Positions 19,241 to 64,000 of a DNA stretch of 64,000 bases are shown here, piece by piece. The first letter of the stretch is position 1, and each line of letters begins with the position of its first letter. The notes under the pieces are model-generated. The model saw nothing but the letters and a program-made list of their open reading frames with translations. It was not told the DNA's origin and did no database searches. Source of the stretch: Asterias rubens (taxonomy: Eukaryota). The position numbers were made by a program, and so were the translations under genes. The stretch covers positions 14,632,001-14,696,000 of the forward strand of contig NC_047070.1 in assembly GCF_902459465.1 (NCBI RefSeq). The letters run 5' to 3'.

Positions 19241-20465
19241 TTAATAATTTATTTTTGGTAGGGGGGGTGTGAAAGAAAATGCACACCAGCGCATTAATTA
19301 GTGTAGTACGTAGGCAAGAAATGGACAATCAAAAAAAATTATGATGGAAAATGTAGGTCCTCATTACCCACTCAGTTTAAAAAAAGAGCTATCAGAATTC
19401 TGCTATGTAGAATTAAAAGAATGGACACAAGTTCACACAAAAATATTCATTCCATTCTAATTTAATATCAATGAGTTCAACATTTTATTTAAAGCAATGC
19501 ACACAAAATTAAGTCTTTACATTTGCATCTCTAAAAAAATGTCTTAAAAATAGTGATGTCACTGCTTTAAAGGACACTTACTTTACTTGGTAACAGTAAG
19601 AAAAGATTGTGGGAAATGACTCTCTCTGAAGCAACAGAGTTTTTTTAGAAAGAGGTTTTTTTTTGCAACAAGGGTGTGCTCTTTCGTCATTTTCTTGCAT
19701 GTTTGAAGAGCCCAAATTATCACAGATTTGCTAACTATTTGGATGCATATGTTGGGATTCACCAAGTACGAATACTGGTCTTTGTCAATTACCAAAGGTG
19801 TCTAGTGCCTTTAACCAATCATCAAAACAACTTCAGTTTGCTTTCTTTGCCTTATTATCAAAACTTTGTCCTTTTGGAATGTTAACTTAAAATCTCAAAA
19901 ACAGAACAAATAAGTGGAAGGTCTGTAAATTTTTTTACTTTAAAGAAAGGAAAAAGTACAAAAACTGGAATAAAAATTGTTACAACTGAATTGAAAGACT
20001 TATTAACTCGGAATTTAACCATTGTAAAATTTGTTCAAATAAAACTGTTCATTTATTCCCATGCCTCATTTTTAAAATGAAAGAAAACAACAGTGCTCTA
20101 AAACTTCTTTGTTTTCAAACATCAACAATTTTCCACCTTTTTTCTCTCTCACATCATTATGTAAACTTACTTAAAAACTAAAAAGATTAATGTACAAGTC
20201 TTGATTCAGAGTTATTAAATAATTATGGTTTTTATGGACTAGTTCATAAGATTATGGACTAGTTCATAATATATATTGGGTGCATTCGATAAGTTTACAC
20301 GAGTTGTTCAATTAGCCATCACGTGATACTCGTGTCTTCGCCCGGTGTCAGCCACCACAGACCCAGGTACCAGCGGGGCTCTGGTGACTACCACGAGTGT
20401 TCCCCGGTACACCCGGGAAGCCAAACAACCACACCCAATATGGACCATTGGTAAATAGAGACATC

Positions 20466-20632
20466 TTATCTGTGGCCATCAACCGAGGCAACTACATGTA
20501 AAGAGTTTCGGCAGTTCATGCTGTGGTGGGCCCAATCAGCAGATTGGCACTTAGGGCTGCAGTAAGTTTGCTGAAGGCACAACGAGCACTCGAACTGACC
20601 TACCAGTCCGCAGGTGCACAGCTTTGAAGTGT
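20466..20632 (-). CDS. PKHD1L1: PKHD1L1-like last exon: MYND-type zinc finger + stop
   Basis: CTC-x7-CSLC-x5-C-x3-C-x7-H-x3-C with the YCS..CQ..DW..H signature; long poly-Y acceptor; phase 1. Confidence 0.85.
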
Positions 20633-23600
20633 CTGTAAGAAATAGGAGAAAAGAACAAAGAAAGTTTAAGTAATGATTGAAGATTTGCATGCGTGATGGA
20701 TAAGAATAAACTATAAATAATGGTTGCGAGTACAACCATGTGTAAATCTCTTTTAGGGGAGTGTTGGCTCGTCTTTAAAAAACAGAAAAAAGTTTCTTAC
20801 TTTTTTCTGAAGACTAGCAGAGTATACTGTTTCAAGCGTCGAGACCAACCCAGCTCTTTTCAGAGCCAATACTCCCTCTAAAGAGAATTATTACATGTTT
20901 GAACTCACAAGTTTACTTTAATTTATAGTATATTCTTAGAAAGTATAAGTTTTTAAGCTTTGCATGGTGTCTGGCCAAAATCTGCATCCAAAAGTCGTAT
21001 TATGTAACATGCAGTTGGTGAGAAAATGGGCCAATGCAAGCACACACCCCTTAACTTCAAAGAAACTTCAATCCTAGATTCTGAATGGTCAACCCATACC
21101 AACAAGAGGTGTTATAATTATAGGAATAGACCCCATGTATAACGCAAAACAGTTAAGGCTGATGAGGTCACATGCACGTTTCTACGCACAAAAATCAGCT
21201 ATCGTCCAATGATTTGCTTCCTTTGGCCTCAGTGAGAGTGCCTTTTGAAAGGGTGACGTCATATGCATATGAATGTTTATGAGTGCAATGGTGAGAATAT
21301 TTTTATGAGGTTAAGATTGAACATTTCATCTGTCAAAGAATGACAATTATTCTCTCCATTGCATGAATGCAAAACATGTATTACTTGAAACTTTGCATGG
21401 TGGAAATAAGATATAGAAGAGTTTGCGGTAACACCATGTAATAACAATCTCTAAATGAGTTGGGGTGACTGACCCTCAGTCACCTAGGCCCCACACCCTC
21501 ACCATCCCCTGTGCTTGTTCCTACTGACACAGTTCAGTGAGCACACACCCCCCAAGGCTCCACAGCAGGTTTCACCACGCATCATCGAGTTCACTTCCCG
21601 CCTATATTTCCCGCTTTCGTGCATCACCGCTGATCCGCCGCCCAGTACTTAAGCAGCATGCGGCATCAGAGTCCAGCATTCACCAGAAGACGATCAGAGC
21701 ATACTGATCGAAACGTCGAGTTAAACCAACGGTTCTTTTCAGAACCACCCCAACTCATTTAGTATACACATAATGAATGTTTATGAGTGCAATGGTGCGA
21801 ATATGTTCATGAGTTGAAAGAGGGAATGTTCTATTCAACGAGGCGGAGCCGAGTTGAATGGAACATTCCAGCTTTCAATGAATGAACATATTCGCACCAT
21901 TGCACGAATGAAAAACATTCATTATTTGTTTTATATAACATCCAAGTACATCTTTGTCATTTTGATTGAAAGATACAACTTTCAAAACAAACAATTTCAA
22001 CAGTAGAAGCCGAATGCTAGTAATTTTACTATGCCTTCTTGCAGTAACACCTGCTGCGTTACCAAAGACACGCGCACGCAGTGATGTTTTTACCGTGCTT
22101 TTTCGTTCCATCCGAAAAGTACCATTGCACGCTGCCAGCGTGCAATGGTACTTTTCGGATGGAACGAAAAAGCACGGTGAGTGACTCAGCGTGCAATGGT
22201 ACTTTTATTTGCTATCACGTGATGGACAATCCTCCAATCAAATGGCAAGGATCTGCTTGGGTGTTATATAAAGACTGTTATTACATGGTGTTACCGCAAA
22301 CTCTTCTATATCATGTATTACTTACTGACCACCGACAGACAGAACCAGGGTGTAATGTCAGTGTTCGGAACAAATACCTTGGTCCTTGACCCAGCGGATC
22401 AAGACACTATCAGCTTGGTAGACTTCAGAGAGGACTAAGTTTTTCTCCTTAGCCCCGTCAATGTCCTTTAGGGTCTCGTGCATCAAGATGAATTTCTTGT
22501 CCTGGAGTTTAGCGGGGAGGGCCCGCGTCACGTCATCTCGGAGGTCATGCATTGTGCCAACTTTGTTGGCCTCGACTGAGCCGAGCTTCTGGAATTTGCT
22601 GTACGAGTTCTTGGCCATGATGATCATTTGGACACGCTCTTCAAGAACTAAAATATGACACAGGCAAAAAGACTGTTTATCAGGTATACAAATTTGAAGG
22701 TGTTCTAAAAATTAATTAAGTATAAAAACATTTACTTGGGGACAAAGGGGAGTAGAATGAAGCCGCAGAAAGCCGAGCCATGCAATGAGCCCAGGGTTTG
22801 ACATTTTGAAGTAAGGTCAGGTCTGGAATCACAGAGACCACAAAGGCTATGGACTCCAATGCCATGGCGTCGATTCTACAAAGAGCTAAGATCGATCTTA
22901 ACTGTAAATCAATCGAAGTTGCTAAGTAAGGTGTGCTGTCACATTATAAACCACTATGGTAATACTGACAATTTGTCTTGCGATGCACTTTATTGCTTTG
23001 TGAAATCGGCCCCTGGTCTTGGACTTGCTGCCCATTTAAAAGTTTCAACTTAGAGTGCCCTTTGAAAGATGAAAATGGCCTGGCCCTCTCAAAGATGAAA
23101 TTCCAGGCCTGTAGAAGGTAGAAGTAAATACTGGACAGAGCAAAGATCGACCATCCTGGGTCTCTATTCTTACGTCGTTCTTGCTGTCCAGAGGTTTCAG
23201 TGAATCCTGGAGGCAGAGCGGTGACTTCAACCTCAGGGGTACGCCTTGCCGTGTTTGGAGTCGAGCGACCATTGAGGTTCGGGTCTTGGTATCTACAGGG
23301 TGAGAAAAAAGATTACAAAATCGTTGATCCAACAAGCTCCCCAAATGCACCCCTTAATAATAATAATTTGGGGGGCTAATCGTCCTTACTCGCAGCTAGA
23401 GCTGAATTGAGAAGGACGCGGCTACAACGTGTTCGAGAAGCAGGCATGCCAGGGCGCATTCAGCTGCCAGCCACATCAACCCATTATGACCACGGAGCAC
23501 AGCCAAGATCGAAAGTGTTTGATTTTTTCCCGAGGGAGGAAAACTGGAATGTCTGGAAAACCCTCGTGGCACAGCAGAGAACCAACGCACAACTCGACTC

Positions 23601-26600
23601 ACAATGGCCCCGACCAGGAATCGAACCGGGGTCACCGTGGTGAGAGGCGAACGCTTTACGCACAAGCCAACCGTGCCACCCAAATACTTCAAGGCATTAA
23701 GGTAAAATAGTACAGAGATTCGTTATTAATTGTATAATTTATTTGGTGTGACTACACATCTAACAGCACAATAAATGCCAACATCAGGACGAATAGGAAA
23801 TAAGAAGCAATGCTCAGTTTTAGATGTGGGAGGAAAACCCCAAATGGGGGAAACCCAAGCAATCACTTAGCGACTGAAAACCCAATCCACATCCAAGGCT
23901 CCGGTCAGAGGTGAAAGGCAGAAAAAGAAACCACTGAGCAAACCTGATCCCCAACTTGTAAATTGCTACGAGGAAAACAGAATGTTTTACAGGAAATAAC
24001 AAGATAAAAGTCAGTACATAAAATAACCCTCCTCAATTTACTTCTTCCCTTACCCCAAGTTCCTCCAAGTCTTTCCCCTACTTATCAATCTACTTACAGT
24101 GATCTCTCCTGACCTTCATCCTTAAAGTTGGGTTCAGTCAAGGGTACAGCCTCCACCCTGTTCCCCTTCATACCTGACCAAATCCAAAAGAAAACCATAA
24201 ACATTTCAACTTTGTGTATAATGTACGCCATGTTTTGGTGACCCTTTATCAGAAACAAGTCTCTGACATAGAACTCATTGACCAAAACAATTTCAGAGAG
24301 TTACGCGAAAACGGGTCTGTAAACAGAAACAGTTCAAGGCATAGGCAGTTATCTTGAAAAGTAATAACATTTCAGAGCTATTCAAAAATGGGTCTGTAAC
24401 CAGCAAAGTTCATGACACTTGAAAATTAATGTTCCAAAAAACACAATGCCTTTTTTTGTTTATAATTAATGGCACTTAGTCTTTAAAAAAGTTATATTCA
24501 CTTAAAGGCTCACCTCTACACTTGCAGAATTTCCATGCGGTCAACACGATGGTTAGTAAGATAACAGGGCCAAGAGAGACAATAATGATAATGACACAAT
24601 CGGGAAAAGGTGGCTGCAGACAAAACAAAAAGAAAAAAATAGTAATGATAATAATAGTTGCTTTTATATAACACCCAAGCAGATCCTTGCCATTTGATTG
24701 GAGGATTGTCCGTCACGTGATAGCAAATAAAAGTACCATTGCACGCTGAGTCACTCACCGTGCTTTTTCGTTCCATCCGAAAAGTACCATTGCACGCTGG
24801 CAGCGTGCAATGGTACTTTTCGGATGGAACGAAAAAGCTGAGTAAAAACATCACTGCGTGCGCGTGTCTTTGGTAACGCAGCAGGTGTTACTGCAAGAAG
24901 GCATAGTAAAATTACTAGCATTCGGCTTCTACAGTTGAAATTGTTTGTTTTGAAAGTTGTATCTTTCAATCAAAATTACAAAGTTCTACTTGGATGTTAT
25001 ATAAAACAAATAATGAATGTTTTTCATTCGTGCAATGGTGCGAATATGTTCATTCGTTGAAAGCTGGAATGTTCCATTCAACTCGGCTCTGCCTCGTTGA
25101 ATAGAACATTCCATCTTTCAACTCATGAACATATTCGCACCATTGCACTCATAAACATTCATTATGTGTATACTATAGTGCTCAAATCAATCGCTCAGTG
25201 ATGCTCCTTGGTGCTTTAGCATTCACTATTCTTACTGCAAGGTATATGCAGAGTTACTGTGTTAAAGTATGAGACCAATTTACAAAGCACCATGCAATGG
25301 TTTACAAGGTGCTGTGGCGCAATATGCAGCCAATCAAACAAGAAACATCGCAGCGACCCCCTTCTCTTTACGATAAATGCACTGGGTTTTATTACATGCA
25401 TTTAACAGCACATCCAACCTTAAAAATAATAAATTCAAGATTGTACGTTTTGAGATGTGTTTGAGTTCAACAGTCCCCAATTGCATAGAGCTGCTTATTA
25501 GCACAAAAAGGAGCTAAGCACAACAAGATAATGCTTACTAGAATAAGATTAAGATTACAAACCAAACTTTCATGTCACTTGTCCAATACCTGACTGGTAG
25601 CCTGCTAAGCAGTAAATTGCTAAGCAATCCTGCCTAAAGTACTGGTCTCAGCAATAAACTGACGGTGTCATACATTTACTTTAACGTTCACGTTAAATAA
25701 AGATTTAATTAGGACAGTGAATTGTGAACCTTACCGCTTTTTTTGCCTGTATTTCTGTTGTGGTAGCCTGGAAAAAAGGAAAAGAAATTGGATTGTCTGT
25801 GATAGGACTACAAAGGATGAAGTTTGTGATAATTTACATCAACTGTCAACTTTCTTGAAATTTTGGTTTTACCCTTACGCCGATGTGTGTTAGCACTGTA
25901 TATTCATTTCCCAAGTTTTGTGAAAAAAACACAGGCATATTACTCGGGTGAGATTTGAACCCACGACCTTTGCAATTCTAAAGCAGTGTCATACCAACTA
26001 GAACACCGGGAAAGTACTAAGTATACAGTGCTCACACACATCGGTGTCAGGGTTAAACCAAAATTAATATTCTTTATCAACAATGCAAGTTTTACATCTA
26101 ATAAATTGTTGCGGTACCCGCTGCCAAAACATAGGATAAATTTTCGGTAGTCTAGTTGGTAAGTCACTGCTCTAGAATTGCAAAGGTCTTGGGTTTCCAA
26201 TCCCACCCGAGTACTAAGCCTGTGATTAATAAGACCCATAAGTTACAAGACTTACCGCTGTCGTTTCAGATGGTTCTGTCGTCTTCATAGCATGGAGAGA
26301 AAAACATTTGAAAAGACTTCATTAACTGTATACATTGGATGGTATTTTGATGCTGCAAAGAATGCTGATGCTGCAAAGAATGCTTATTATTATTTGGAAT
26401 ATGACTGCTTTATGGTGAGTGACTGAAAGTCAATAAATGTGCAGTTTGTAATAATTATCAATATAAACCACGAGGGAAACTGACTGAGTAAATTTTCAAA
26501 TGATTTTTAGGGTTGAACAAAGAATTGACTAGAGTGGGGTTCGAACCAACGACCTCCGGATTAACGTGCCGACGCTCTACCAACTGAGCTATCTAGCCCT

Positions 26601-29600
26601 ATATTGGTGGTGTCCCTATTTTGTCAATGTCTAGTCAATTCTTTGTTCAACCCCGAAAATCATTTCAAAATTTACCCAGTCAGTTTCCTTTGTGGTTTAT
26701 ATTGATATCTGAAACAAAAAGTCGCATCCCCTTAAGGTGATCCCCTGGCTGCCGCTTCCCAGGTTGTATCGTAATTTGGGTGTGATCCCTGGCTACACGG
26801 CAGTTAACGGTTGTATGGCTTCTGACTGGCACCCTGAACAAAGATATTGACAAAATAGGGACACCACCAATCTATGGCTAGATAGCTCAGTTGGTAGAGC
26901 GCCGGCACGTTAATCCGGAGGTCGTTGGTTCGAATCCCACTCTAGTCAATTCTTTGTTCAACCCCAAAAATCGTTTGTAATAATTGTAAGACTCGTAAAT
27001 CTTACCACTGTTGTTGCTGTTATTTCAAGCATTTCCGTCGTTGTAGCCTGGAAAAAAAAAAATGAGAAAGACATCATTGAATAATTGTATAGTAGCCCGC
27101 TTTGCAAGAACGGCCCTTATGTTCCAAAATTGACTTTTGGAGATCAAACATAGAGGAAAAGGTCATACTCTAAGCTTTAATGTTGTGTCTGTTGGAGCTC
27201 TGCAGCATCTTGCACTCTGGAGACTGACAATATTATACATTGTAAAGATTTTAGTAAAGTACAGGCCTGTATGCTTCGTTTTTGAAAGGGCAAGGACACC
27301 AAGGCATTTTCTCTTTGGCAAAGGGCACCTTATGAGGAAATTGTAAATTTCTACTGGAGCATTTCAAGGGCACCAAGACAATGGCAAGGGGATTGCCTCC
27401 GTTGCCTCCGTGAAGTATCAGGCCTAGTACCCTAGCAACAAACACTTTCTTGCTAGAATTTGCTTCTGAAATTTAAAAAGACATAATGGGGGTGTCGTGG
27501 CCGAGCAAATAAGGGTACCGAACTCAAGCTCTGGTGTTTCTGTTTAGCAGAGTGTGGGTTCGAGTCCCGTTCGTGACACGTACTTGTGTCCCTGAGCAAG
27601 ACACTATACTTAAAACTATAATTGCTTCTCTCCACCCAGGGGTAAATGGGTACCTGTGAGGGCAGAGATAGTTCTTGTGATTAGTTTAATAGCTTAGTAG
27701 CGCATATTTGTTGCACAGGCTTCACACTCAGAAAGCTGAAATGGTTTAAGGAATGAATTAAATGGCCCAGTGACCAGAGGTAATAAAGTTGGAAGCGCTT
27801 TGAGACGCCCTTCGGATGTGTAAAGCGCTATATAAAAATCAATTATTACTATTGTAAAAGTTATCCTGCACAGGTAGAAAAATTACACAGCAATGTTCTT
27901 TTCAATTTATTCAAAATCTGTTAATGTGTAAACTTACCTCTTCGCCGTATGTTACCGCGCCCACCTGTAGGTATTGGACTGGGGTTAGAGTGTAGCCATT
28001 GAACGTCAGAGTAATGTCACCAGACTGAATGTCGCTCCAAATTTCCTCCTGGGTGGCATTCAAGTCTCCTTGGATGTCAAACGAGACAAGAATGGATCCT
28101 AGGATTGGAAGAGAAGACTTCATGAAGTTGTCCAAAGCAATAAAAAGGTAGAATTCTTAACAATAAAAACTTCCAACAAAATAACGAGGCAAAATGCAAA
28201 CAAATTTTACAAGTTGACGTTGAGTGTATAAATGTATCATTGGACGATAGCTGTTCTTTGTGGGTAAAAATGTTCCCGTGACCTCAGCATACTTGTAGCA
28301 TTTGGCGTTATGCAAGGGGATCTATTGGTTTCTATTGCCCCCTGCACAAAAGCAAAACGCACCTTCGAACAATGCACATCTTTTCCGGAGTAAAATCTCT
28401 TGTGCTTAATTTTGTGCATGATTTTTACTCCCAAAATAGTGTAAGGAAAAATGGCATTTGCTGCACGTTGTGCAATAGGTCTAAATGTATATATGCCAGT
28501 GGAGTGAGTGGTGCAAAAACACAAACTTAAATGTGAACAAACATGCATTATACCTCCAGCTAATGTTCTTGTTAGCAACTGAACCGTTTGTTTATGAAGT
28601 TACCTTAAACTCAAGCAAGTGTTTTAGCTGTAGCAAGCACAAAAATGACTTTTCAGTAAAATAGCTTCATGACATTGGGCTCTAAGTTTACTAGACTGGC
28701 AATGTCCTGTGCACAAAGTGCACAAAGGGGCTAAATTACCTCTCTCGACTGATACATTGCTGATCTTAACACCGCTATATCTGGCTCCAAAGTAATTCAG
28801 AACGTAAATCTCAAGCTGAGCCTCGAACCCGGCCGCCACCAGATCGTAATCTCCCGGTAACAGCAGTTTGAGCCGACGCACTGGCCCAGTGTAGTAAAGC
28901 TGCTGATTGGACACCACATCGAAGGAGTCGACCAATAGGGTCAGCTCGTAGACACTTGAAGGCACTGTCACCACGGCGACCTTTAGGACATAGCTGAAGC
29001 CGGTCGCGTCGATAGTCAGGTTGGTGAAATTAGCCTGGCCAGTGCTGAGGTCAAAGGTTGTTTCTAGTTGACCTCCTAGCTGACCTATGTAGTTGGTAGG
29101 CATGAAGAGGGCCATTGTGGCATGCCACTCAAGTCCCTGTAGATCATGGCAATAAAAAAAATATTAACTCTTGAAATTTGCCAGTTTAAAATTGTATTAC
29201 TTGTCCGTTCACTCTTTTGGTCACCATAAAATCACCTATTGACTGGCAGGTCTGAGGAGAGCCAGTTAATAGTATTGTCATCAAGGGTCATCAGCACTAT
29301 TTGGGGGTCCAAAGATTTTGCACTCCTTGATTAATAAGACTGGGTGGAGCTGCACAAACACAGATCAGAAGTAGCAGTGCAAATTTTGCAAGGATTCTGT
29401 TTGGTACGACTGTATCGTTGCAAATTTTGCACTGCTATTTTACTACTGATTCTTAGCTAAGACTGGTGCAAGTCTCGGGCATATTTTATTTTCTAGTGGG
29501 TTTTCAATAGAGTTATTATATACAAGAACTAGAGGGCGCACTGGTGATGCTTCTTGCACAAACGCGACGGGACCTCATGGAGACACGCGCACCATTATGC

Positions 29601-30881
29601 AGGCGCGTTGAATATGAAGAATACATTGGAGTTTGTGTTTATTGAACGCTGACGCAATGCTGTTTTGTCAACTTACAAAATGGCCGCACAAACACACGCT
29701 AAGCAATACCTGTTTGTTCAACTTAGAAAATGGCCGCCTGCGCACATACGGGGCGCGTATATAGTACGGGGCGCGTATATAGGTCAGTGCGCCCTCTAGT
29801 TCTTATATATAACTCTATGGTTTTGTGTGATCTCACCTTGGTCATGAGGTCTCTATAAGGAATCATCAGCGTAATCTCATCTCTCAGCTCAATGATCACC
29901 TCAAAGGTTGTGTTTTCATTCACCATGTCCGGTGCCCTCAACGCCGACAGGTAATACGGCCGCACGGCCACGTCGAAGGCATTGGAACTGACCGCAAGAC
30001 TGGATGTGTTGGGCTTGGTGACCGCAAAGTCTAAAATGACTCCTGATACAGTCAAGTTCATAGTCAGATCTGTGAAGTTGGCCCAGCCACTGATGAATGA
30101 CACGGTCAGGTTTCCTGAGAGCTGGCCGCTTGTACTTGATGGATTCATCGATGCCGTAACTTGCCAGGGATTTGAGGCAATTCCAAGTTGGGGGATCATA
30201 ATTCCCTGTAGGAAGGTAAAATCAGTTGTTTGATCAATGATGACAATAATTATGATACTTAAGTTAGCTTTTGACCCCAACGTTTCCTGCAGGAAAAAAA
30301 TCTGCACAAAGATACATAGACAAGTTTTATCAACGATCCTGGGCCAAGTTTCATAAAGCCAGTCTGTAAGCACAGAACAAATTTACTTAACAGAAACTGG
30401 ACACGAGCCAAAATTCTACAAAGTTAACCGAGTTGCAACTTGTGCCCCACAAAATGTTTGCTTGGCAAAGAAAATCGCTATTAAGCAGTATTTTCTGCTC
30501 AACAGCTTTATGAAATTGGGCCCTGCTGTTGATTTCACCAATTTCTTTCTAATTTAGGGTTAATCTTAGGACGAGTTAAGTTCTGTATTAATAGGCCTTA
30601 AGGAGCCGTTTGAACACATCCTAAGTTAGGACGAGTTACCTGTCCAAACTCGAGATTGGATTAATCCTAGCGTTTTGTGAAATCGGCTGCTGGACTCTTA
30701 CCAGTGCATCCACGGCATAAATTAAGGGCTGTTGAATGAAGGGAGCTCTCTCTCTGGCCTCATCAGGTTGTGTGTAGATGACTAGGGATTCTGCAGTGCG
30801 GTAGACAACCTCAACTACAAACTCAGCATACTGTTTCTCTTCGATCTTATGCTGTATCTCAGAAACCCTGACAGAAACAAA

Positions 30882-30914
<33 letters not shown>

Positions 30915-33900
30915 GAATATTTATAAGGCGCCAAAATCCACCATTAGGTGCTCAAGGCGCACAAGAGGGGAAACCACACACAGCAAAGGAAAGTTAAGCA
31001 TAAAAAGGATAAGTTTGGTGAGCAGAAAAGACAACGTGGAAACAAATGCAGACCAGTTTGAGCCGTGTGAAATACATCGCGTGGTGTGTCATGACCGAGC
31101 AGATAAGAGCACCGGACTCAAGCTTTGGTGTTTCTGATCAGCAGAGTCTGGGTTCGAGTCCCAGTTGTGACACTTGTGTCCTTAAGCAAGACACTTAACC
31201 ATTATTGCTGTGCCTTTAGATGGGACGTAAAGCCATAGGTCCTGGGTGTTGAATATTTCTCGTAAAAGAACAAAGTGCACTTATCGTAAAGAGAAGGGGT
31301 TCGCCCCTGTATTCCTGGTCTATGAAGGAATAGGTCTCATGCTTAAAAAATGTAGCTTCAAACAACAAAGCTTACAAAGGTCCACTTTTGTCTGGTGCTT
31401 TGATTGCTCAACACATCCTTTATGATTCCAAAGAAATATCCAACATGAAGAAGAGACTCTACTCACGTTTTGGTCCCGTTGGGTACATCACTGGACCCGC
31501 CTGTTTCATTGGTGGCATGCACACCTCCTGTGGGATCGACGGGTTCTGCAACTGGGTCGGTCATAGACATGGAGGTAATCGTGATGTTCAGTAAACCTCC
31601 GAGGCTTCCTGACTGTAAGTCGTCAACCAATAAAGACTGGACCTCAACCAATTGGTCAAAGTTTAGGGCGGTACCTGGTGCTGATGCTACAAAGTACAGA
31701 GAAAACATTTGCACAAAGTAATGGATAAAGTCTTTAACATGAATTCCATTTTCATTTCAAATTAATAACACAGAAAGAAAACAAAACTTCATAAAGACAA
31801 ATAGTTTTCAGAATGTTGCTTGGGGTCCATTTACTTCTATTTCATCTTACTAAGCTCGTCTTTGATACAAATTATGAATCAACTCATATTATTTTGTGTC
31901 TCTTCGTTTTTCTTTTGGGTTAATGAAATTTAGAACCAATGTTTGGGGACAAACATCTCAAGTTTACTGAAAACACTTTCAACCACCAGTTCTTTTTAGA
32001 ATCAACATACTCAAAAAAGATTTACACATGGTGTTACTCCAAACCTCACCAGATTATTAAAAATAAATACAAAATAAATACTCCCACCATGCCAAGTTTC
32101 CAATTCTATTTAGAAAACACTTTATTTAATTTGTTCAGTCAAATGAAAGACTGAATCTTCAGTCCTGAATACTCACTTGGGACATTTTGTGGGGCCGGTG
32201 TAGTTGCATTAACGCTCGTGTCATTCTGAGTTGTCTCTGAGCCAGGTGACTCAATTATTGGCACTGGCGGAGGCCCGATCTCAATCACCACCTCTGTTTC
32301 GCCGCCAACAGCACGGCGTCGTCGACGTCCACTCGCCTCGCTGACCACATCCACGATGCGGATCTGCGACTTATCCACGTTGAGCAGTCCGGCGAGATTC
32401 CGTATAAGATTCACCTCGAAGAAGTCGTCGACGGTCACGGCGGGGACACCGAAGGTGACCATGATGACGGCAGTGGTGCGGATCTCAATGGGCACTGGAC
32501 CCTTTATAAGCATCCACAGGGTCTGGGTTGTACGATCAAAGTAGTTCTCGCCATAAACACTAGAAGTGACGGAGGGATTGTATTGGTCGGCGGGTAGGTT
32601 AGGATCCTTGGCCTTCCAGGTGAAGTCGCCGGTGCTGAAGTCGGCATTGTTGGGGTTAACGTACCGATTCTGAAATACAAGTATCTGGGTTTTCTTATAC
32701 AATTTTTGAAGCGAGAAATACTTCTGGTTTAATAGATGGGTTGCACATGCTGTCATTGACCTACATCGTTGACAAAACGTGTTAGTGTGAAAGGATTTTA
32801 TTGGCTGAGAGTTGTGCGCAGTAATCCATCTATATAATGTAAGGGACAATACTTTAATATACAATCTTCAATAAACACACAATCAAACCAAACTGTGTAA
32901 GTTTCATCAAATTGGATGGTCAAACTTATTGAAAACAACAAATTAAAGTTCATATTTAGTTAAAAGTTTTTCTGTCAACTTGAAGAAACTGAAAGAAAGA
33001 TATAGGATTTGAGGCATTGCATGGTAAGGTATCAATATATATTTGGTTTGCTGCAACACCATGTGTGTATCTACTTGCCAGGTAGAGTTTGTTCATAGAG
33101 GACTGTCTTTCTTTATTCTACTACTGCGGAGTAGATTGTTCAGGTTTTCGGGAGACTTCTCAGTTCTGAAAAGAACTGTCCTGCTTTTTAACAATTACTC
33201 CGGCAGATGGTATAGAAAATAGGCTGGGACTACTACTTTAGCGTAAAGGATCGTAATTAACTGTACTACCGCGCAGTCAGTTCTTAAATTGGTCTCAACG
33301 TTTTGACTAGCTTGCTTTAGTCATCGTCAGGAGACTGAAAGAAAGATATTGTACAAGGAAATGTTACCCGATAATAAACATCCAATCGTTGGGGATTGGC
33401 GTACCAGATTCCAATCACAACTGCTTGGCTATCAAGAGAGTTTATCAGATGGAAACGAAGAGTCTGGGGATTGGTGCTGGTGAAGTACACCTCATACTCC
33501 TTCCCAGTGGCTATCAAGGTATAGAACGTACTGATACGCTCCTGGCATGTGTACCTGTAGAAGAGAGTACAAGGTTGAGAAATTTGAGATTTAGGAAAAC
33601 TGATTTTTGCCAGTCTCGGGTCACGTTGAGTCCCATGGTCCGAGTCCAAGTAAGGGTGCTTCAATAATAATAATAATAATAACCATATTTATAACGCGCC
33701 TTTTGCCAAAGGATACAAAGCGCCAGGTATTATTACTGCAAGGAGTGGGCATAGTTTGAGATATAAGATCTAATCCTTAGCACCATGTAATGGTTTACAA
33801 GGTGCTGTGGCGCAATATGCTGCCAATCCGGCCAGGAACACTGGGGCAAACCCCTTCTCTTTACTATAAGTGCACTGGGTTCTTTTAAATGTGTTTACAC

Positions 33901-36900
33901 ACCACATGGGACCAAAGGCTTTACGTCCCATCCGAAGGAAGAAGCAATGGTTAAATGTCTTGCTTAAGGACACAAGTGTCATGGCTGGGGATTCGAACCC
34001 ACACTCTGCTGATCAGAAACACCAGAGTTTGAATTCGGTGCTTCAAGACCGATTCGAAGTCCGAGACCACAACAAATGGACTCGAGAACCCTTCTCGAGT
34101 CTGTGACTGGATTTGTGACCTCCAGCATAAGAATACAAGGTTGAGAAATTAAAGATTTGGAATTGGTACTTAACATTTCTAAGCATTTTCAACATACTAG
34201 GCTTGTGCAAATAGTTGTCGCTAACCTGAGAGCAGCGACTGATAACAATAAGCATAGAAGGCGCATGGTAAGATGCTCCTTGAAAGGGTCTCTAAGTAGT
34301 AGTCCAAGACAATATAAATTATAAAAATATCAAATTCTTTGATAGCAAATTTTGAAATCGCCGTATTAATTGCTTTTCCTTTAGTCTTTCTCAGCTCCCT
34401 AGGGAGTATACAACGCGAGCAACTGCAGCGCTCAGGTGGCGCTTTATCATACACAATATCAACCTCTACCCTCGCAGGTACCCAATTATACCCCTGGGTG
34501 AAGAGAGGCAATTATGGTTAAGTATCATGCTCAAGTACACAAGTGTCAAGAGCAGGACCTGAACACACACTTTAACCACCAGAACTTGAATTCAATACTC
34601 TAAACCAATCGGCCATGATACCCGAAGTTAGGCCAACTTACCCATTACACCATCCCGCATCCTGTGGACCGTTGATTAGGTCCACATAGCCGTCGGTGTA
34701 CATGGCCAATGGTGAAAGACGTCTGATTTCAGTGTCTGCATCCATACTCTCTATAATCAACATCATATGGTCGATACCGTGGCATTTATAGGCCTGCCAG
34801 TAACCAATCCATTCACACTCGTTGTTTTTTCCTCGGTAAATACCTACAATTAGGGGTGAAACCACACAATAAATAGTTATGTCCGAGTGTTGTCTATCCA
34901 ACTAGAAGGTAAAAAGAGGGGTGTCGGATGTTTCTTTTGACACAAGCGGTTACACGAGTTGCATTTATCAATCGGAGAGGGAAATAAATTGTAGAACTTT
35001 AATGACCCATAAGTAATAAATAAATATCTGTATTTATAAGCTTTCATAGCAACTACTTCATCAGAGGTAACGAGGGTTCATATCGGTTTTCATTTTGCAA
35101 AGAGCACTTCCATTGGAAAATTCAAGGGACATTTTTTGAAGGGCACCTAGGGCAAAACCAGGGGCAACAAAGGCCATTGCCTCCATGCAATTCCAAAGCC
35201 TGACTTTCATCATCAGTTAGCACCATGCATTTCTGCACCGGCTTCCAGACTGGTGAGAAGCTTTCAAATAGACCCATCTTGAGCTGCCACTTCTACCTCC
35301 TCCACGGACCACCCAGTGTCCACTATGGAGGGGTCCCTCTGGATTACATTTTCACTTACCCTTATTTGGTGCAATATCGTCCACTGGAATTCGCGACCCA
35401 TCCGGTCTGGTCAGCATGACCTTTGGGATACGGTAATCACCGAGACCCCGCCTGGGATCGCCGTTCCACTTGTACGCCGAGTCGGGGATGATTGTTCCCG
35501 CTGAGCCAAGTAGGGAACCATCAGAATCCCGGAGTAAAACTTTCTTCAGACCGTCACAGTCCATGTCCACACAGTCGGATGGGTTCACAGCGCTGAAAAT
35601 AATCATTTTAGTTTGGTCGAAGACTGGTCACGTAGGTGTGTATTAAAGGAACACGTTGTCTTGGATCAGTCGAGTTGGTCTTTGAAAAGCGTTTGTTATA
35701 AAATGCATATGTGATGGGTAGAAAGATGCTGTAAAAGTAGAATACAATGACCCACACAAACATGCCTCGAAATTGCACGGTTTTCCTTTTATCTCGTCGA
35801 CTAACACAGTCGGCCATTTATGGGAGTCAAATTTTTGACTCCCATAAATGGCCAACCGTGTTAGTTCGCACAGTAAAAGGAAAACCACGCAATTTCGAGG
35901 CAAACTTGTGTGGATCATTGTATTCTACTTTTAAAATATCTTTCCAACCGTATGCATTTTATAACAACTGGTTACAAACGCTTTTTTATAGACCAACTCG
36001 TCCGATCCAAGGCAGTGTGTTCCTTTAACATGTGATGTAAAGACCGACTGTGTAAACTAGAAAATATGGAACCCCTAGACAAGCACTTTGTTGTGTTGAA
36101 AGTAATGTTTGCACATGTGCTTGTTGTGCAGAAATAGCGCTTATAACTTTCACTCAACATTGAGTACTTTTTCTGCAAGGTAGCGCAGAGTTATAATTGT
36201 AATAGACCGATCCAGTAGGCTCCGCCCAAGACGCACGTGTGAGCAAGAACACATGGGGCTCTCCAATGCGTTTCTGCACAACTCTTCCCCGCGCGCCAAG
36301 ATACGCGCACGCATGTCGGACCTTATTTGTCGGACCTTCGTTGCGATGTGATTGGTCAATACGCAATGGGGCGGAGCTTAATGGATCGGTCTCTTGCTTC
36401 GCATCACAAAAAGATAAACGGGTACTTGTAAGGGCAGAGATAGTTCATGTGATTGTTGTAGCTTGGTACACTACAAACTAGGCAGCTCGGTCTGTATACT
36501 CCCCAGGGAGCCGAGATGATTTAAGGAAACAAATCACAGTGACCATGGGCTAATAATGTTGGAGCGCCATGATCATCACATAATTGAGCACTTTAGAAGA
36601 AGCCACTATTATTAGGTGTTTGGGCTCAGCCATTGGAAGCCGTTGGGAAGTATTGAAAACTATTGAAAGTTGCTTCATACTATTTTAGAGAAAGGAAGCA
36701 GAAACTGCTCTTACCGTAGGTTCGGTGTGTGAATGTATAATTTACGCCTCTCCTCCACATCTTCAAATGTCAAGCCCCTCGTAAGCATAGGGTGCATTGC
36801 GTCTTCACTCAATCTATTGGTCATGATCGCAACATCTGGCCGTCCACAATACGTACCAAATCTTCGAAACACTACATCTGTTTTGTTTGAATAAAAGGGA

Positions 36901-39900
36901 AGGTATTACGCTGGGAATCACTCTCAAAATTAATTATAACCAAAAATATTGGTTTTATTATTCATGGTTTATTTATTAAAACACTGCAGTACAGCGGCTA
37001 AAAAGCCGAAATGCACAGTTTACAAAAAAGTCATTGAAAAACATTACTATTAAAAAATATTAATGTATAAACTTAAAAAGAGCACAAAAACAACTTGATA
37101 AGATTAGAAAACCAACCATCGCTCACTTAGAAAAACCAATATAATTGTCATTAAAGTTACAGCAATGATTACTTATGAGACTAGGAGTCGCTACATGGCA
37201 AAAAATAAAGAAATGGCAAATCACAGTTGGCAAGAACACATTTGGTAATAACAATTAAAAAAAAAAGGCAATTTACAATTAAACCATCTATTACTATAAA
37301 AAAAGAAGATAGATATTTTTAAGCTGAGGGGATTTGGCCAGAAGTTCACAAAATGCGGGCAAGAGCAGGAATAGTGGATCGTTTGTACCTTTCAGTACGA
37401 CACTTGGGAATGTGAAGCCCGGTTACTGTGCTGGCTCGAAGTACCCTATCACGTGTAGTAGTTTTTTCCGGGGGGAGCATGTTCCTAAACTTAGAGGATC
37501 CAAGTAAGTTCTTACCAAACTTTATAAAAAGGTCTTCTCTTCTAGACTTGAGTGATGAGATGCCCAGTAATTCAAGTGCCATGGTATAGGATTGATATTG
37601 GAGGCCAAGAATAATGCGGGCGGCACGTTTCTGAACATTTTCAACAGCAATAACCTGGCGCTCAGTAATAGAGCTGTGCCAAACTTGACTAGCGTATTCC
37701 AGAACAGGTCTAATATAACAAGTATAAACTGCCACCATGTCTGTAGTAGGTACTTTGGATTTACGTAGTACGCACAAAGTGTACAACCTACGGGATGCCT
37801 TAGAAACAACTTCCGCAATGTGTATGTCCCATTTTAAGTTGTTTTGAACAGTCACACCAAGCAATTTAATTGAAGTTGCACACCTGAGATTTATCGAATT
37901 GAGAAAAACCAAAGTTTGAGGTACATCGCGCTTCAAAAAAGATATCGTCATTGTGCAACATTTCTCAGGTTTTGGGAGCACATCATTACTTTTACACCAG
38001 GTAGATAAGTTATCAAGGTGATCTTGTATAGAGGATTGTTGATCGTACTTAACAACTTCACCTAAAGTAAGATCATCCACATACTTCCACCGCCCACAAC
38101 CTCCAACTGATGCATCATTAACTAACACAAGAAACAAAATGGGTCCCAGCTTTGTTCCTTGGGGTACACCACAGGAAATATCCCGAGTGGTAGAAACCAC
38201 ACCATGAAGTTTAGTGTTCTGAGTACGGTCAGTGAGGAAGCTGCAGACAGTGGGGATAATGGATCTTCTTACACCTAATTTAATAAGTTTATTAATTACA
38301 ATATTATGGTTAACCCTGTCAAAAGCTTTCGTAAAGTCCACAGTACAGAGTTTGGCATAATAGTTTGGCATGTCAATTCCCCGATGAACATAATTGAGCA
38401 TGTCCACAAGGTAGTAAACAGTGGAACTGCCCTTGATATTACCGTATTGCTTGGGATCAAGTTTGGTTGAAATTTCCTCTAGCAGCCATCTAGCAATGAA
38501 GGTTTCAAAAACTCGAGCGAAAATTGGAGTGAGTGAAATTGGCCTCAGCTGGTCGAAAGAGGAAATGTTTCTTTCCTTTGGGATTGGTACAACAGTCGCT
38601 GTTTTCCACATATTTGGGAAAATTCCTTCCGAAGCCTCAGTGTTTTACACTAGTATAGAAAGCATTTTGAGAAACATTTCACTTCGAAGTATTATGGTTG
38701 TGTCCACAAAGTTATTGTACGCGCAAGCCCTCACTCTGTAGATGGAGAGAGTGCGCGCATGCAGTAACTGGGTGAGAGTTCATTATTCCATTTTACAGCT
38801 ATAGGCCTGCCATGATCACGATGACAAAGCCACTTTAATTGAAAGAGGATTTTCTGATTTTGTTCAGAAGTGTTTTTCTTTTCTTTTGCAAAGTGAAATT
38901 TCTTTATTGGTACTTTATTGCACTGGATTCTTTTACATGGGTTGCACAATATAGGGATCAACGGCTTTACGTCCCATCTGAAGGACAAATCAATGGTTAT
39001 GTCTCTTGCTTATGGACACAAGTGTCATGGCTGGGTATCAAAATTATCATCAAAATCATGAAATGTTAAATTTGCATCGGGGAAAAAAAATATTAATTTT
39101 GGTTTTTACCCATACACCTATGTGTGATAGCACTGTATACTCAGTACTTCCCCGAATCAAGTGAAAAAATATCACAGGCATTACTCGGGTGGGATTTGAA
39201 CCCACAACCCTTGCAATTCTAGAGCAGTGTCTTACCAACTAGACTACCGAGATTGCCGTAGCTAGGTAGCTAGAGATTTCCCGGTAGCTAGAGGCAGTGT
39301 CAAATGATGACAGTTTAAACAAACTTACCTTCGAGCATGCTTACACCATTGAGGGTCGGGTAACTCGTGACTGGATGAAACCCAAAGAATGGCGCCAAGT
39401 TTTGTAAGGACATAAAGCTGGGCCACACAATGCCAGTGTACCCTCCACCAGGGGAGTAGGGCGCCCTCTGTATGCTGCTGTGGCCAAAGTTCTCTGGTGG
39501 CACCATCTGGTTTTGTCATGTAAAGGAGGGACAGAGATGAAGCAAGATCAATAGAGTACACAGAGAAATCACAACATCAAATAGTTTTACAAAAAACATA
39601 TTCAATGCATGTTATACTCATACTAATATTCATACTAATTTGCCTTTGACCTATTGCTGGACTTCACGTGAAAATAATAACCAGTTTTATATAGCGCTTT
39701 CCTCACCCGAAGGGCTTCTCAAAGTGCTTCCAACATTATTATCACGTGGCCTTAATTCATTCCTTAAACCATCTCAGCTGCCTGGGGAGTACACAGCCTG
39801 TGCAACAATTATATGCGCCACTATGCTAAACCAATCACAAGAACCATCTCTGCCCTAACAGGTACCCATTTACCCCTAGGTGGAGAGAAGCAATTAAGTG

Positions 39901-63654: not shown

Positions 63655-64000
63655 CTTCAAAGATAATGAAGAAAAAGACGCAGCAATAATGCGCAGGTGT
63701 CATGGTTTTAAGAACACAAGTTTCAAGGCTGGGACTCGAACCCACACTCTGCTGATCAAAACCACCAGAGCTTGAGCTTGGTGTTCTATCCGTTTTTTAT
63801 ATAAGCAAAATAATAATTCCACTAATAATGAATAACATTCACATCTTTTCTAAAAATAAAAATAAATAAAAAAACACACAAACAACCTCACAGACGAAAC
63901 ACCAACCTGAGTATCTAATGAAATGACGCACTTAATCAGGTCATATGATGATTCCTTTATGAGGCATGGCAAACTCCCAACGGTGACATTGACATTGGAA

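What the first reader, a model, noticed from the sequence alone, without database searches (positions are those of the whole stretch)
20466..24613. Fibrocystin-L carrying a signalling-type cytoplasmic tail that ends in a MYND zinc finger
Seen: after the TM exon, four exons splice in frame (phases 1-2-1-1) into a ~215-aa tail ending in CTC-x7-CSLC-x5-C-x3-C-x7-H-x3-C with the YCS..CQ..DW..H MYND signature. Established: vertebrate PKHD1L1 has only a few cytoplasmic residues. PKHD1/fibrocystin has a domainless ~190-aa tail released by Notch-like proteolysis. MYND fingers (ETO/MTG8, BS69, EGLN1) bind short proline/leucine motifs in co-repressors and chaperone cofactors. Inference: this lineage may use fibrocystin-L as a receptor whose released tail carries a MYND adaptor, possibly into the nucleus. 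I do not know this architecture from described fibrocystin-family members. The first ligand pair is CxC rather than CxxC.
Basis: partly seen in the sequence, partly recalled or inferred. Interest (0 to 1): 0.85.

Follow-up and report, generated by a model that had tools for sequence, protein, structure and literature searches.

The report
Fibrocystin-L with ubiquitin-like–MYND cytoplasmic tail
A sea-star relative of the hearing and kidney-disease protein fibrocystin-L really does carry a ~215-residue intracellular tail with a ubiquitin-like domain and a MYND zinc finger; the tail is an ancient feature shared with sea anemones and acorn worms that vertebrates lost, not a novelty of this lineage.

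Summary
On the minus strand, five exons with canonical AG/GT sites (24613-24514, 24173-24098, 23292-23174, 22647-22378, 20632-20466) join in phases 1-2-1-1. They encode a 243-aa segment made of a TM helix, a linker, a conserved TP…LPPGF motif, a ~90-aa domain and a Pfam zf-MYND (E 1.1e-7, above the gathering score). Spliced transcript contigs join these exons. One 3.3-kb contig from a sister species runs from the 3'UTR through the MYND exon to the TM exon and 1.5 kb further into the gene body.

The body has fibrocystin-L-type domains (TIG, G8, two CEMIP beta-helices). AlphaFold2 and Foldseek show that the ~90-aa exon encodes a ubiquitin-like beta-grasp.

The same UBL plus MYND tail, always with the odd CxC first ligand pair, ends 'fibrocystin-L-like' gene models in several groups:
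- all five echinoderm classes;
- three hemichordates;
- cnidarians (Nematostella).

Amphioxus keeps only the UBL. The sampled vertebrates, tunicates, molluscs and one annelid have neither domain.

The architecture is therefore ancestral. It sits in RefSeq models, but no paper I could search describes it. Proteolytic release and a nuclear role remain untested, and no conserved NLS was found.

The scan had not noted this tail on other DNA.

The parts
24514..24613 (-). TM exon: six extracellular residues, the transmembrane helix and a basic/Cys juxtamembrane stretch (KFCKCRG); leaves in phase 1
   Evidence: splice sites, frame; X3 record 15 laid on 24512-24614; P0022 residues 4041-4073
24098..24173 (-). 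Tail exon 2: acidic, poorly conserved linker (76 nt, phase 1 to 2)
   Evidence: P0022 4074-4099, 85% identity; a 74-nt unlaid stretch of the X3 contig at this position
23174..23292 (-). Tail exon 3: conserved motif N-T-x-R-R-T-P-E-V-x-V-T-A-L-P-P-G-F (two Thr-Pro sites plus LPPGF)
   Evidence: junctions 22647|23174 in X2 and X3; motif conserved across Ambulacraria
22378..22647 (-). Tail exon 4: a single symmetric (phase 1-1) exon encoding a ubiquitin-like beta-grasp domain
   Evidence: 17 true homologues, one of them at residues 4484-4566 of a 4619-aa hemichordate fibrocystin-L-like protein; AF2 pLDDT about 90, beta-beta-alpha-beta...beta; Foldseek hits to ubiquitin, UBL and UBX
20466..20632 (-). 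Terminal coding exon: MYND zinc finger (CxC-x7-CxxC-x5-C-x3-C-x7-H-x3-C), a 15-residue C-terminus and the TAA stop
   Evidence: PF01753 E 1.1e-7; PDB MYNDs of DEAF1, SMYD2, ETO, ZMYND10; junction 20632|22378 in X1 and X3
19405..20465 (-). 3' UTR, at least about 1.06 kb
   Evidence: X3 record 15 is continuous over 19405-20632; X1 record 3 is continuous over 19788-20632
25726..28099 (-). Last ectodomain exon (27932-28099) and three mini-exons for a Thr-rich stalk (about 26985-27050, 26250-26282, 25726-25767)
   Evidence: tblastn of P0022; the mini-exon matches are short and weak
28732..63999 (-). Body of the gene: exons collinear with residues ~751-3955 of P0022 (IPT/TIG repeats, G8, two CEMIP-type beta-helix regions)

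Best explanation
The region holds the last five coding exons of a sea-star fibrocystin-L (PKHD1L1-like) gene on the minus strand. They are spliced onto the giant ectodomain to give a single-pass membrane protein. Its ~215-residue cytoplasmic tail has four parts: a disordered linker, a conserved Thr-Pro/LPPGF motif, a ubiquitin-like beta-grasp domain (one symmetric exon) and a C-terminal MYND zinc finger whose first ligand pair is CxC. These steps are shown by sequence, transcripts, homology and structure prediction.

The tail is the ancestral state of the family. Cnidarians and ambulacrarians have UBL plus MYND, amphioxus has UBL only, and the vertebrates, tunicates, molluscs and annelid sampled have neither.

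The mechanism is inferred. The UBL-MYND pair acts as a membrane-tethered docking module. The MYND binds short Pro/Leu motifs of cytosolic partners, and the UBL offers a second interaction surface. Together they couple the surface-coat/adhesion ectodomain to intracellular machinery. In vertebrates that coupling was given up when the protein was reduced to an 8-residue tail or a GPI anchor.
For: Exon structure and frame. zf-MYND above the Pfam cut-off. PDB MYND matches. Spliced contigs joining the MYND, UBL, motif and TM exons and 1.5 kb of the body. Body domains (TIG, CEMIP beta-helix, hyaluronidase-like). Collinearity with the 4283-aa model P0022. The same tail in 21 ambulacrarian full-length models, in separate C-terminal fragment models from Amphiura and Antedon, and in 3-4 cnidarian models, with CxC invariant. 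UBL HMM hits in amphioxus and cnidarian tails only. The B. belcheri gene stops right after the UBL, with no MYND ORF in its locus or 10 kb downstream. AF2 mean pLDDT 83.5, about 90 over both domains. Foldseek hits to ubiquitin, UBL and UBX (probability about 1, TM by target 0.55-0.64) and to the USP19 UBL+MYND insert as top Swiss-Prot hit. In the ectodomain-only tree the tail state lies on both sides of the cnidarian/bilaterian split. Vertebrate tail of 8 aa: PMC6707252. GPI anchoring in platelets: PMC13566292.
Against: The runs are labelled 'RNA?' (kind guessed) and are assembler contigs. In contigs matching the window almost exactly, only two of the four tail junctions were among the rows shown; the complete chain comes from a ~4%-diverged relative. 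The first zinc-ligand pair is CxC, not CxxC, so zinc site 1 geometry is unverified. Precomputed Pfam did not flag PF01753 in several sea-star orthologues. The Foldseek E-values for the UBL are modest (1.6e-3 and above) and no Pfam ubiquitin family matches the exon. No partner, localisation or binding data exist, so the docking-module mechanism is inference from what MYND and UBL domains do elsewhere. No PKHD1 outgroup was in the tree, so PKHD1L1-versus-PKHD1 orthology rests on best-hit names.
Confidence: 0.8

Rival explanations
1. One reading: fibrocystin-L here is a Notch-like signalling receptor. Regulated proteolysis releases the tail, and the freed UBL-MYND fragment carries a signal to the nucleus or to co-repressor complexes.
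For: By established knowledge, the paralogue PKHD1 undergoes regulated cleavage with release of its tail, and several MYND proteins (ETO, BS69, DEAF1) act with co-repressors; these MYNDs are the nearest PDB matches. The folded module sits at the far C-terminus behind a ~70-residue disordered linker, an arrangement compatible with release.
Against: Nothing in the sequence tests cleavage. No conserved K-K/R-x-K/R cluster exists in 24 tails outside the juxtamembrane stop-transfer residues. MYND domains are equally common in cytoplasmic proteins (SMYD2, ZMYND10, USP19).
Confidence: 0.12
2. The UBL and MYND exons belong to a separate downstream gene, or the join is a gene-model or assembly artefact.
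For: A 1.7-kb repeat-rich intron separates the last two exons. NCBI models Amphiura and Antedon C-terminal fragments as separate 'uncharacterized proteins' (P0014, P0016).
Against: A single contig crosses all the exon junctions at the exact GT/AG borders and continues into the body. The reading frame is kept across four introns. Twenty-one independent ambulacrarian full-length models and three to four cnidarian ones show the same order, TM - motif - UBL - MYND. P0016 itself contains ectodomain end, TM, motif and UBL in one piece.
Confidence: 0.02
3. The tail serves the protein's own trafficking or turnover rather than signalling. The UBL would engage ubiquitin receptors or the proteasome/p97 pathway, as UBX and UBL shuttle domains do. 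The CxC 'MYND' would be mainly a structural cap, controlling delivery of a >4000-residue protein to ciliary or microvillar membranes or its removal.
For: The Foldseek neighbours of the beta-grasp are UBL and UBX domains of USP7, Dsk2, p47, UBXN1 and NPL4. The closest two-domain match is the UBL+MYND insert of USP19, an ER-anchored deubiquitinase. Amphioxus keeps the UBL without the MYND, so the UBL can work alone.
Against: The MYND is the most conserved part of the tail (CVCGLVGQFxCSLC is nearly invariant across echinoderms). It keeps the Q..DW..H residues that, by my recollection of the ETO-SMRT complex, line the peptide groove. That argues for a ligand-binding role.
Confidence: 0.15

Closest known systems
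Vertebrate fibrocystin-L (PKHD1L1)
   Same: A giant ectodomain with IPT/TIG repeats, PA14, two G8 domains and two beta-helix regions. It is 42-44% identical over the membrane-proximal region and nests inside the bilaterian clade of the ectodomain tree.
   Different: Vertebrates have an 8-residue intracellular end (PMC6707252) or a GPI anchor (PMC13566292). The models end in a hydrophobic stretch with no UBL and no MYND.
RefSeq 'fibrocystin-L-like' models of Ambulacraria and Cnidaria (for example Glandiceps talaboti XP_077992871.1, and models of Ptychodera flava, Saccoglossus, Lytechinus, Patiria, Acanthaster, Asterias amurensis and Nematostella)
   Same: The same tail order, TM - TP/LPPG motif - UBL - CxC MYND; 40-72% identity in the tail.
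   Different: Nothing essential: the window's gene is one more member. The cnidarian members have longer tails (340-400 aa) and some carry cadherin repeats in the ectodomain.
PKHD1 / fibrocystin
   Same: The same family of ectodomain; a cytoplasmic tail of comparable length.
   Different: By established knowledge its tail has a ciliary targeting sequence and an NLS but no folded domain.
USP19 UBL + MYND insert
   Same: It is the top Swiss-Prot structural match and covers both domains in the same order (query 33-159, E 1.9e-4). The architecture is confirmed in PMC9133600.
   Different: It is inserted in a deubiquitinase catalytic domain. Identity is 15-17% and rmsd about 15 A, so the relative domain orientation is not shared. 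The MYND has a canonical CxxC. Common descent was not tested.
MYND fingers of DEAF1, SMYD2, ETO/CBFA2T1 and ZMYND10
   Same: Sequence matches over ligands 2-8 and the YC..CQ..DW..H core (E 9e-4 to 0.3).
   Different: The first pair is CxC instead of CxxC. The context is membrane-tethered rather than a nuclear or cytosolic soluble protein.

Membership tests
zf-MYND (PF01753) | Score above Pfam's gathering threshold | tested here: met
   32.3 bits against 22.7, E 1.1e-7, profile positions 4-39 of 39
zf-MYND (PF01753) | Eight zinc ligands C4-C2HC with spacing CxxC-x7-CxxC-x5-C-x3-C-x7-H-x3-C | tested here: inconclusive
   All eight ligands are present and seven are in canonical register. The first pair is CxC, one residue short, and is left unaligned by the HMM. 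CxC is invariant in the 26 intact homologous MYNDs from cnidarians to hemichordates, so it is a conserved family trait and not a lesion.
zf-MYND (PF01753) | Binds two zinc ions and a Pro/Leu peptide | not testable with these tools
   Only the Q..DW..H core is seen to be conserved. AF2 gives pLDDT about 90 for the finger.
Fibrocystin-L / PKHD1L1 | Ectodomain with IPT/TIG array, G8 and two CEMIP/PbH1 beta-helix regions | tested here: met
   (TIG E 2.5e-34; CEMIP_beta-hel E 4.7e-59 and 8e-12); the Pfam lists of P0022 (collinear exons)
Fibrocystin-L / PKHD1L1 | Single C-terminal membrane anchor | tested here: met
   a 21-residue hydrophobic helix in exon 24613-24514
Fibrocystin-L / PKHD1L1 | Orthology to vertebrate PKHD1L1 rather than PKHD1 | tested here: inconclusive
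   Every named protein among the best 120 hits is called fibrocystin-L, PKHD1L1 or an equivalent, and vertebrate fibrocystin-L nests within the bilaterian clade. No PKHD1 outgroup was available.
Fibrocystin-L / PKHD1L1 | Minimal cytoplasmic part (the vertebrate hallmark, 8 aa) | tested here: not met
   About 216 cytoplasmic residues. This difference is the finding itself; it is a vertebrate-derived trait, not a family-defining one.
Ubiquitin-like beta-grasp | beta-beta-alpha-beta...beta topology with structural similarity to ubiquitin, UBL or UBX | tested here: met
   strands 33-41, 47-56, 81-84 and 109-114, helix 61-71, pLDDT about 90; USP7 UBLs, SUMO, ISG15, ubiquitin, Dsk2 UBL; probability 0.98-1.0, E from 1.6e-3, TM by target up to 0.64
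Ubiquitin-like beta-grasp | Sequence match to a Pfam ubiquitin-family model | tested here: not met
   no family at E below 0.1 for the 89-aa exon. The assignment is by fold only; RA, RBD or PB1-type beta-grasps are not excluded (PI3K RBD also appears).
Notch-like regulated-proteolysis receptor | Cleavage that releases the tail; nuclear targeting signal | tested here: inconclusive
   Cleavage cannot be tested here. A regex scan found no conserved K-K/R-x-K/R cluster in 24 tails, which is a weak negative.

The most novel reading that the evidence does not exclude
Ancestral fibrocystin-L was a signalling receptor. Ligand- or force-dependent proteolysis frees a UBL-MYND fragment that recruits co-repressor or chaperone-type partners, possibly in the nucleus. 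Chordates dismantled this pathway stepwise: the MYND was lost in amphioxus, and the whole tail was lost or replaced by a GPI anchor in vertebrates.
Probability: 0.12. Interest if true: 0.8.

Novelty: new variant of a known kind. Interest (0 to 1): 0.5.

Why it matters
PKHD1L1 is studied as a stereocilia coat protein and deafness gene. It is viewed as an almost purely extracellular molecule, so how the fibrocystin family talks to the cell interior is an open question.

This finding shows that the family's ancestral form carried a folded UBL-MYND module inside the cell. The module has been conserved since before the cnidarian-bilaterian split and was lost stepwise in chordates. That gives a concrete handle on the question: a small, expressible domain pair whose partners can be fished out in sea urchin, sea star or Nematostella.

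It also reframes the vertebrate protein as a derived, decoupled form. In addition, it documents a conserved MYND subtype with a CxC first ligand pair.

Tried and rejected
- My first exon-2 donor (24097) broke the frame. Moving it one base to the GT at 24097-24096, so that the exon ends at 24098, restored it.
- Pfam on the linker, motif and UBL exons gave nothing significant.
- An exhaustive phmmer search with the 89-aa UBL exon found only 17 true hits, mostly ~100-aa read-through ORF fragments. This was useful only because one hit was a full-length hemichordate protein.
- The protein-atlas search on the tail gave scores of 0.74 or less (ubiquitin plus zinc-finger clusters). These are leads only and were not used.
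- The PDB sequence search of the whole protein found only CEMIP2, plexin and MET IPT domains and no PKHD1L1 entry.
- I considered juxtamembrane Cys palmitoylation resembling the ciliary targeting sequence of PKHD1. The cysteines are not conserved outside sea stars and a few others, so I dropped the idea.
- I considered the LPPGF motif as an in-cis MYND ligand. This could not be tested without model coordinates or a complex prediction.
- Literature searches for PKHD1L1 or fibrocystin together with MYND returned only gene lists.
- I checked whether amphioxus merely lacks the last exon in its models. The B. belcheri locus has an in-frame stop right after the UBL and no MYND-like ORF in 64 kb.


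Full report
**What is in the sequence.** I read the minus strand of 20300-24800 and built the splice in a script.
- The five exons are 24613-24514, 24173-24098, 23292-23174, 22647-22378 and 20632-20466.
- All are bordered by AG and GT.
- They join in phases 1-2-1-1 into an open frame of 243 codons ending at TAA 20468-20466.
- My first attempt set the exon-2 donor one base off and broke the frame.
- The product has six extracellular residues, a 21-residue hydrophobic helix and about 216 cytoplasmic residues.

**MYND.** The peptide of the last exon matches Pfam zf-MYND at E 1.1e-7, 32.3 bits against a gathering score of 22.7.
- The match covers profile positions 4-39 of 39. The first cysteine is left out because the first pair is C-T-C rather than CxxC; the other seven ligands are in canonical register.
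- Against PDB sequences the nearest fingers are DEAF1, SMYD2, ETO/CBFA2T1 and ZMYND10.

**Is it one transcript?** The look-up of sequencing runs gave runs of three coded organisms. I laid Logan contigs of four runs on 19400-25300.
- Record 15 of run X3 (3325 nt, about 4% diverged, so a sister species) lies on 19405-20632, 22378-22647 and 23174-23292. It then lies on 24512-24614 and runs 1524 nt further upstream.
- Record 3 of X1 (0-5 differences) joins 20632 to 22378.
- Record 12 of X2 (no differences) joins 22647 to 23174.
- Contigs that skip introns exactly at GT/AG borders can only come from spliced RNA, whatever the guessed library label. The MYND exon is therefore the 3' end of the same mRNA as the TM exon and the body, with a 3' UTR of at least 1.06 kb.
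- The caveat is that the complete chain of junctions is seen in the relative. In the near-identical contigs only two junctions were among the rows shown.

**The gene.**
- Upstream exons on the same strand carry IPT/TIG repeats (E 2.5e-34) and two CEMIP-type beta-helix regions (E 4.7e-59 and 8e-12). They match the hyaluronidase CEMIP2 structure.
- tblastn of the 4283-aa protein P0022 places its residues ~751-4283 collinearly on 63999-20469 at 85-98% identity for most exons; the lower tblastn figures come from alignments that overrun short exons or cross low-complexity stretches. The five tail exons are included. P0022 is shown with hidden source, meaning the window's own protein or a near copy.
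- P0022 shares its contig length with an Asterias amurensis paralogue (P0025). The window is therefore from an asteriid sea star or a close relative.
- A Thr-rich stalk between the last ectodomain exon and the TM exon is coded by three mini-exons.

**How widespread is the tail?**
- An exhaustive phmmer search of 1.84 billion representatives with the 89-aa exon-4 peptide found only 17 true hits. One of them lies at residues 4484-4566 of a 4619-aa protein, NCBI 'fibrocystin-L-like [Glandiceps talaboti]'.
- Word-indexed searches with the tails of that protein and of P0022, and with a membrane-proximal ectodomain region of the Ptychodera protein, brought in 139 proteins. I scanned them for MYND patterns, last hydrophobic segment and tail length, and with an HMM of the motif-plus-exon-4 region.
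- The order TM - linker - [N]TPxR[ST]PE..V..LPPG[FV] - ~90-aa domain - CxC MYND ends full-length models from these groups:
  - asteroids (Asterias, Patiria ×2, Acanthaster ×2);
  - echinoids (Lytechinus ×2, Diadema ×2);
  - holothurians (Holothuria ×2, Apostichopus);
  - an ophiuroid (Amphiura);
  - crinoids (Antedon ×2, Anneissia ×2);
  - three hemichordates (Glandiceps, Ptychodera, Saccoglossus).
- Two Nematostella proteins (6423 and 4770 aa) and one EukProt protein also end in the domain plus a CxC MYND. The Clytia protein has a degenerate version.
- Eight amphioxus models have the ~90-aa domain but end right after it. I fetched the B. belcheri locus. It has an in-frame stop immediately after the domain and no MYND-like ORF in any frame of the 64-kb locus, including 10 kb downstream.
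- Vertebrate, tunicate, mollusc and annelid proteins have neither element. Vertebrate models end in a hydrophobic stretch.
- The CxC first pair is invariant in every intact MYND found. It is therefore a conserved signature of this sub-family and an argument for a single origin.

**Tree.**
- I built a maximum-likelihood tree of 62 proteins from ectodomain columns only, so that the tail could not influence it (quick IQ-TREE, LG+G4, SH-aLRT support).
- It separates cnidarians from bilaterians (100). Hemichordates and echinoderms form starred clades. Vertebrate fibrocystin-L falls inside a clade with amphioxus, tunicates and protostomes.
- The UBL+MYND state lies on both sides of the cnidarian/bilaterian split, so loss in chordates and protostomes is the simplest reading.
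- The root is at the midpoint only and no PKHD1 outgroup was available. Ancient paralogy with differential loss is therefore not formally excluded.
- The window-like protein is sister to the second Asterias paralogue (100), which indicates a recent duplication.

**The ~90-aa domain.**
- I aligned 35 tails (A1) and ran AlphaFold2 on the P0022 tail. Mean pLDDT was 83.5, about 90 from residue 30 to 160 and low in the N-terminal motif.
- The domain has strands 33-41 and 47-56, helix 61-71 and strands 81-84 and 109-114, which is a beta-grasp.
- Foldseek against the PDB returns USP7 UBL domains, SUMO, ISG15, ubiquitin, Dsk2 UBL and UBX domains. Probability is 0.98-1.0, E starts at 1.6e-3 and TM by target reaches 0.64.
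- Against Swiss-Prot models the top hits are USP19 residues ~720-875. They align to both the beta-grasp and the MYND (E 1.9e-4). USP19 is known to carry a UBL and a MYND inside its catalytic domain (PMC9133600).
- No Pfam ubiquitin model matches. 'Ubiquitin-like' is thus a fold assignment, and Ras-binding-type beta-grasps are not excluded.
- The domain is one symmetric phase-1/1 exon and the MYND is its own terminal exon, the layout expected of shuffled modules.

**Mechanism.**
- Shown: a type-I membrane protein with a huge adhesion/coat-type ectodomain and a conserved, folded UBL-MYND pair at the end of a partly disordered cytoplasmic tail.
- Inferred from what these domains do elsewhere: the MYND docks short Pro/Leu motifs of cytosolic partners. 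The Q..DW..H core that I recall as lining the peptide groove of ETO is conserved. The UBL supplies a second binding surface. The TP…LPPGF motif is a likely phosphorylation or docking site. I put about 0.6 on this docking-module reading, within an overall 0.8 for the structural and evolutionary statement.
Cleavage cannot be read from sequence, and a scan of 24 tails found no conserved K-K/R-x-K/R cluster beyond the stop-transfer residues.
- A trafficking or turnover role through the UBL is a reasonable rival, given the UBX, UBL and USP19 neighbours and the UBL-only tails in amphioxus.

**Comparison with what is known, and novelty.**
- Mouse PKHD1L1 has an 8-residue intracellular end (PMC6707252). 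In human platelets it is reported as GPI-anchored (PMC13566292).
- Searches of the paper library for PKHD1L1 or fibrocystin together with MYND, and for fibrocystin-L with Nematostella, sea urchin or amphioxus, found no paper that mentions this tail.
- The architecture is nevertheless present in many automated RefSeq models, and PF01753 is in the precomputed Pfam lists of several. It is therefore new to the literature I could search but not to the databases.
- The window's gene is an ordinary member of an ambulacrarian norm. It stays above ordinary because an ancient intracellular module in a disease-relevant family, lost stepwise in chordates, appears to be undescribed and is directly testable.

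Noticed in passing
window 21760-22283 and 24652-25175: Two copies of a 524-nt repeat in inverted orientation, 97% complementary, bracket the four exons from the TM exon to the UBL exon. The upstream copy ends 39 nt before the TM-exon acceptor. Each copy contains an internal perfect 43-nt palindrome. Both have very high depth in the transcript contigs, so they are a high-copy element. Such a pair could favour back-splicing or exon skipping; no back-splice joint was among the rows listed.
   Followed up: partly
window 26526-26598 (-) and 26875-26949 (+): Two tRNA-Asn(GTT)-like sequences in opposite orientation inside the stalk intron. They coincide with the tRNA-headed retroelement noted as s1-150906.
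   Followed up: no
window 37346-38611 (-): A 421-aa ORF with a YVDD-type reverse-transcriptase motif inside an intron of the fibrocystin-L gene, probably a non-LTR or Penelope-like retroelement remnant.
   Followed up: no
window ~25726-27050 (-): The Thr-rich stalk between the ectodomain and the TM helix appears to be coded by three mini-exons of about 33-66 nt. The matches are short, so the borders are approximate.
   Followed up: partly
P0078, P0102, P0113 (mollusc fibrocystin-L tails): Bivalve tails lack the UBL and MYND but carry 'SPLPPVG', reminiscent of the ambulacrarian 'LPPGF/V' motif. This may be a remnant of the ancestral tail.
   Followed up: no
P0039 (Amphiura filiformis) and P0124 (Clytia hemisphaerica): These C-termini look like MYND fingers that have lost cysteines, so they are decaying copies in paralogues.
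   Followed up: no
L001 (Branchiostoma belcheri KV411586.1) 10001-54197: The amphioxus gene ends with an in-frame stop directly after the UBL-like domain. No MYND-like ORF exists in the locus or in 10 kb downstream.
   Followed up: yes
P0022 and P0025: Two fibrocystin-L paralogues (4283 and 4679 aa; 83% identical in the membrane-proximal ectodomain, 72% in the tail) appear to sit on the same 24.4-Mb Asterias amurensis contig and are sisters in the tree. This points to a recent duplication in asteriids, separate from the older Patiria/Acanthaster paralogue pair.
   Followed up: partly
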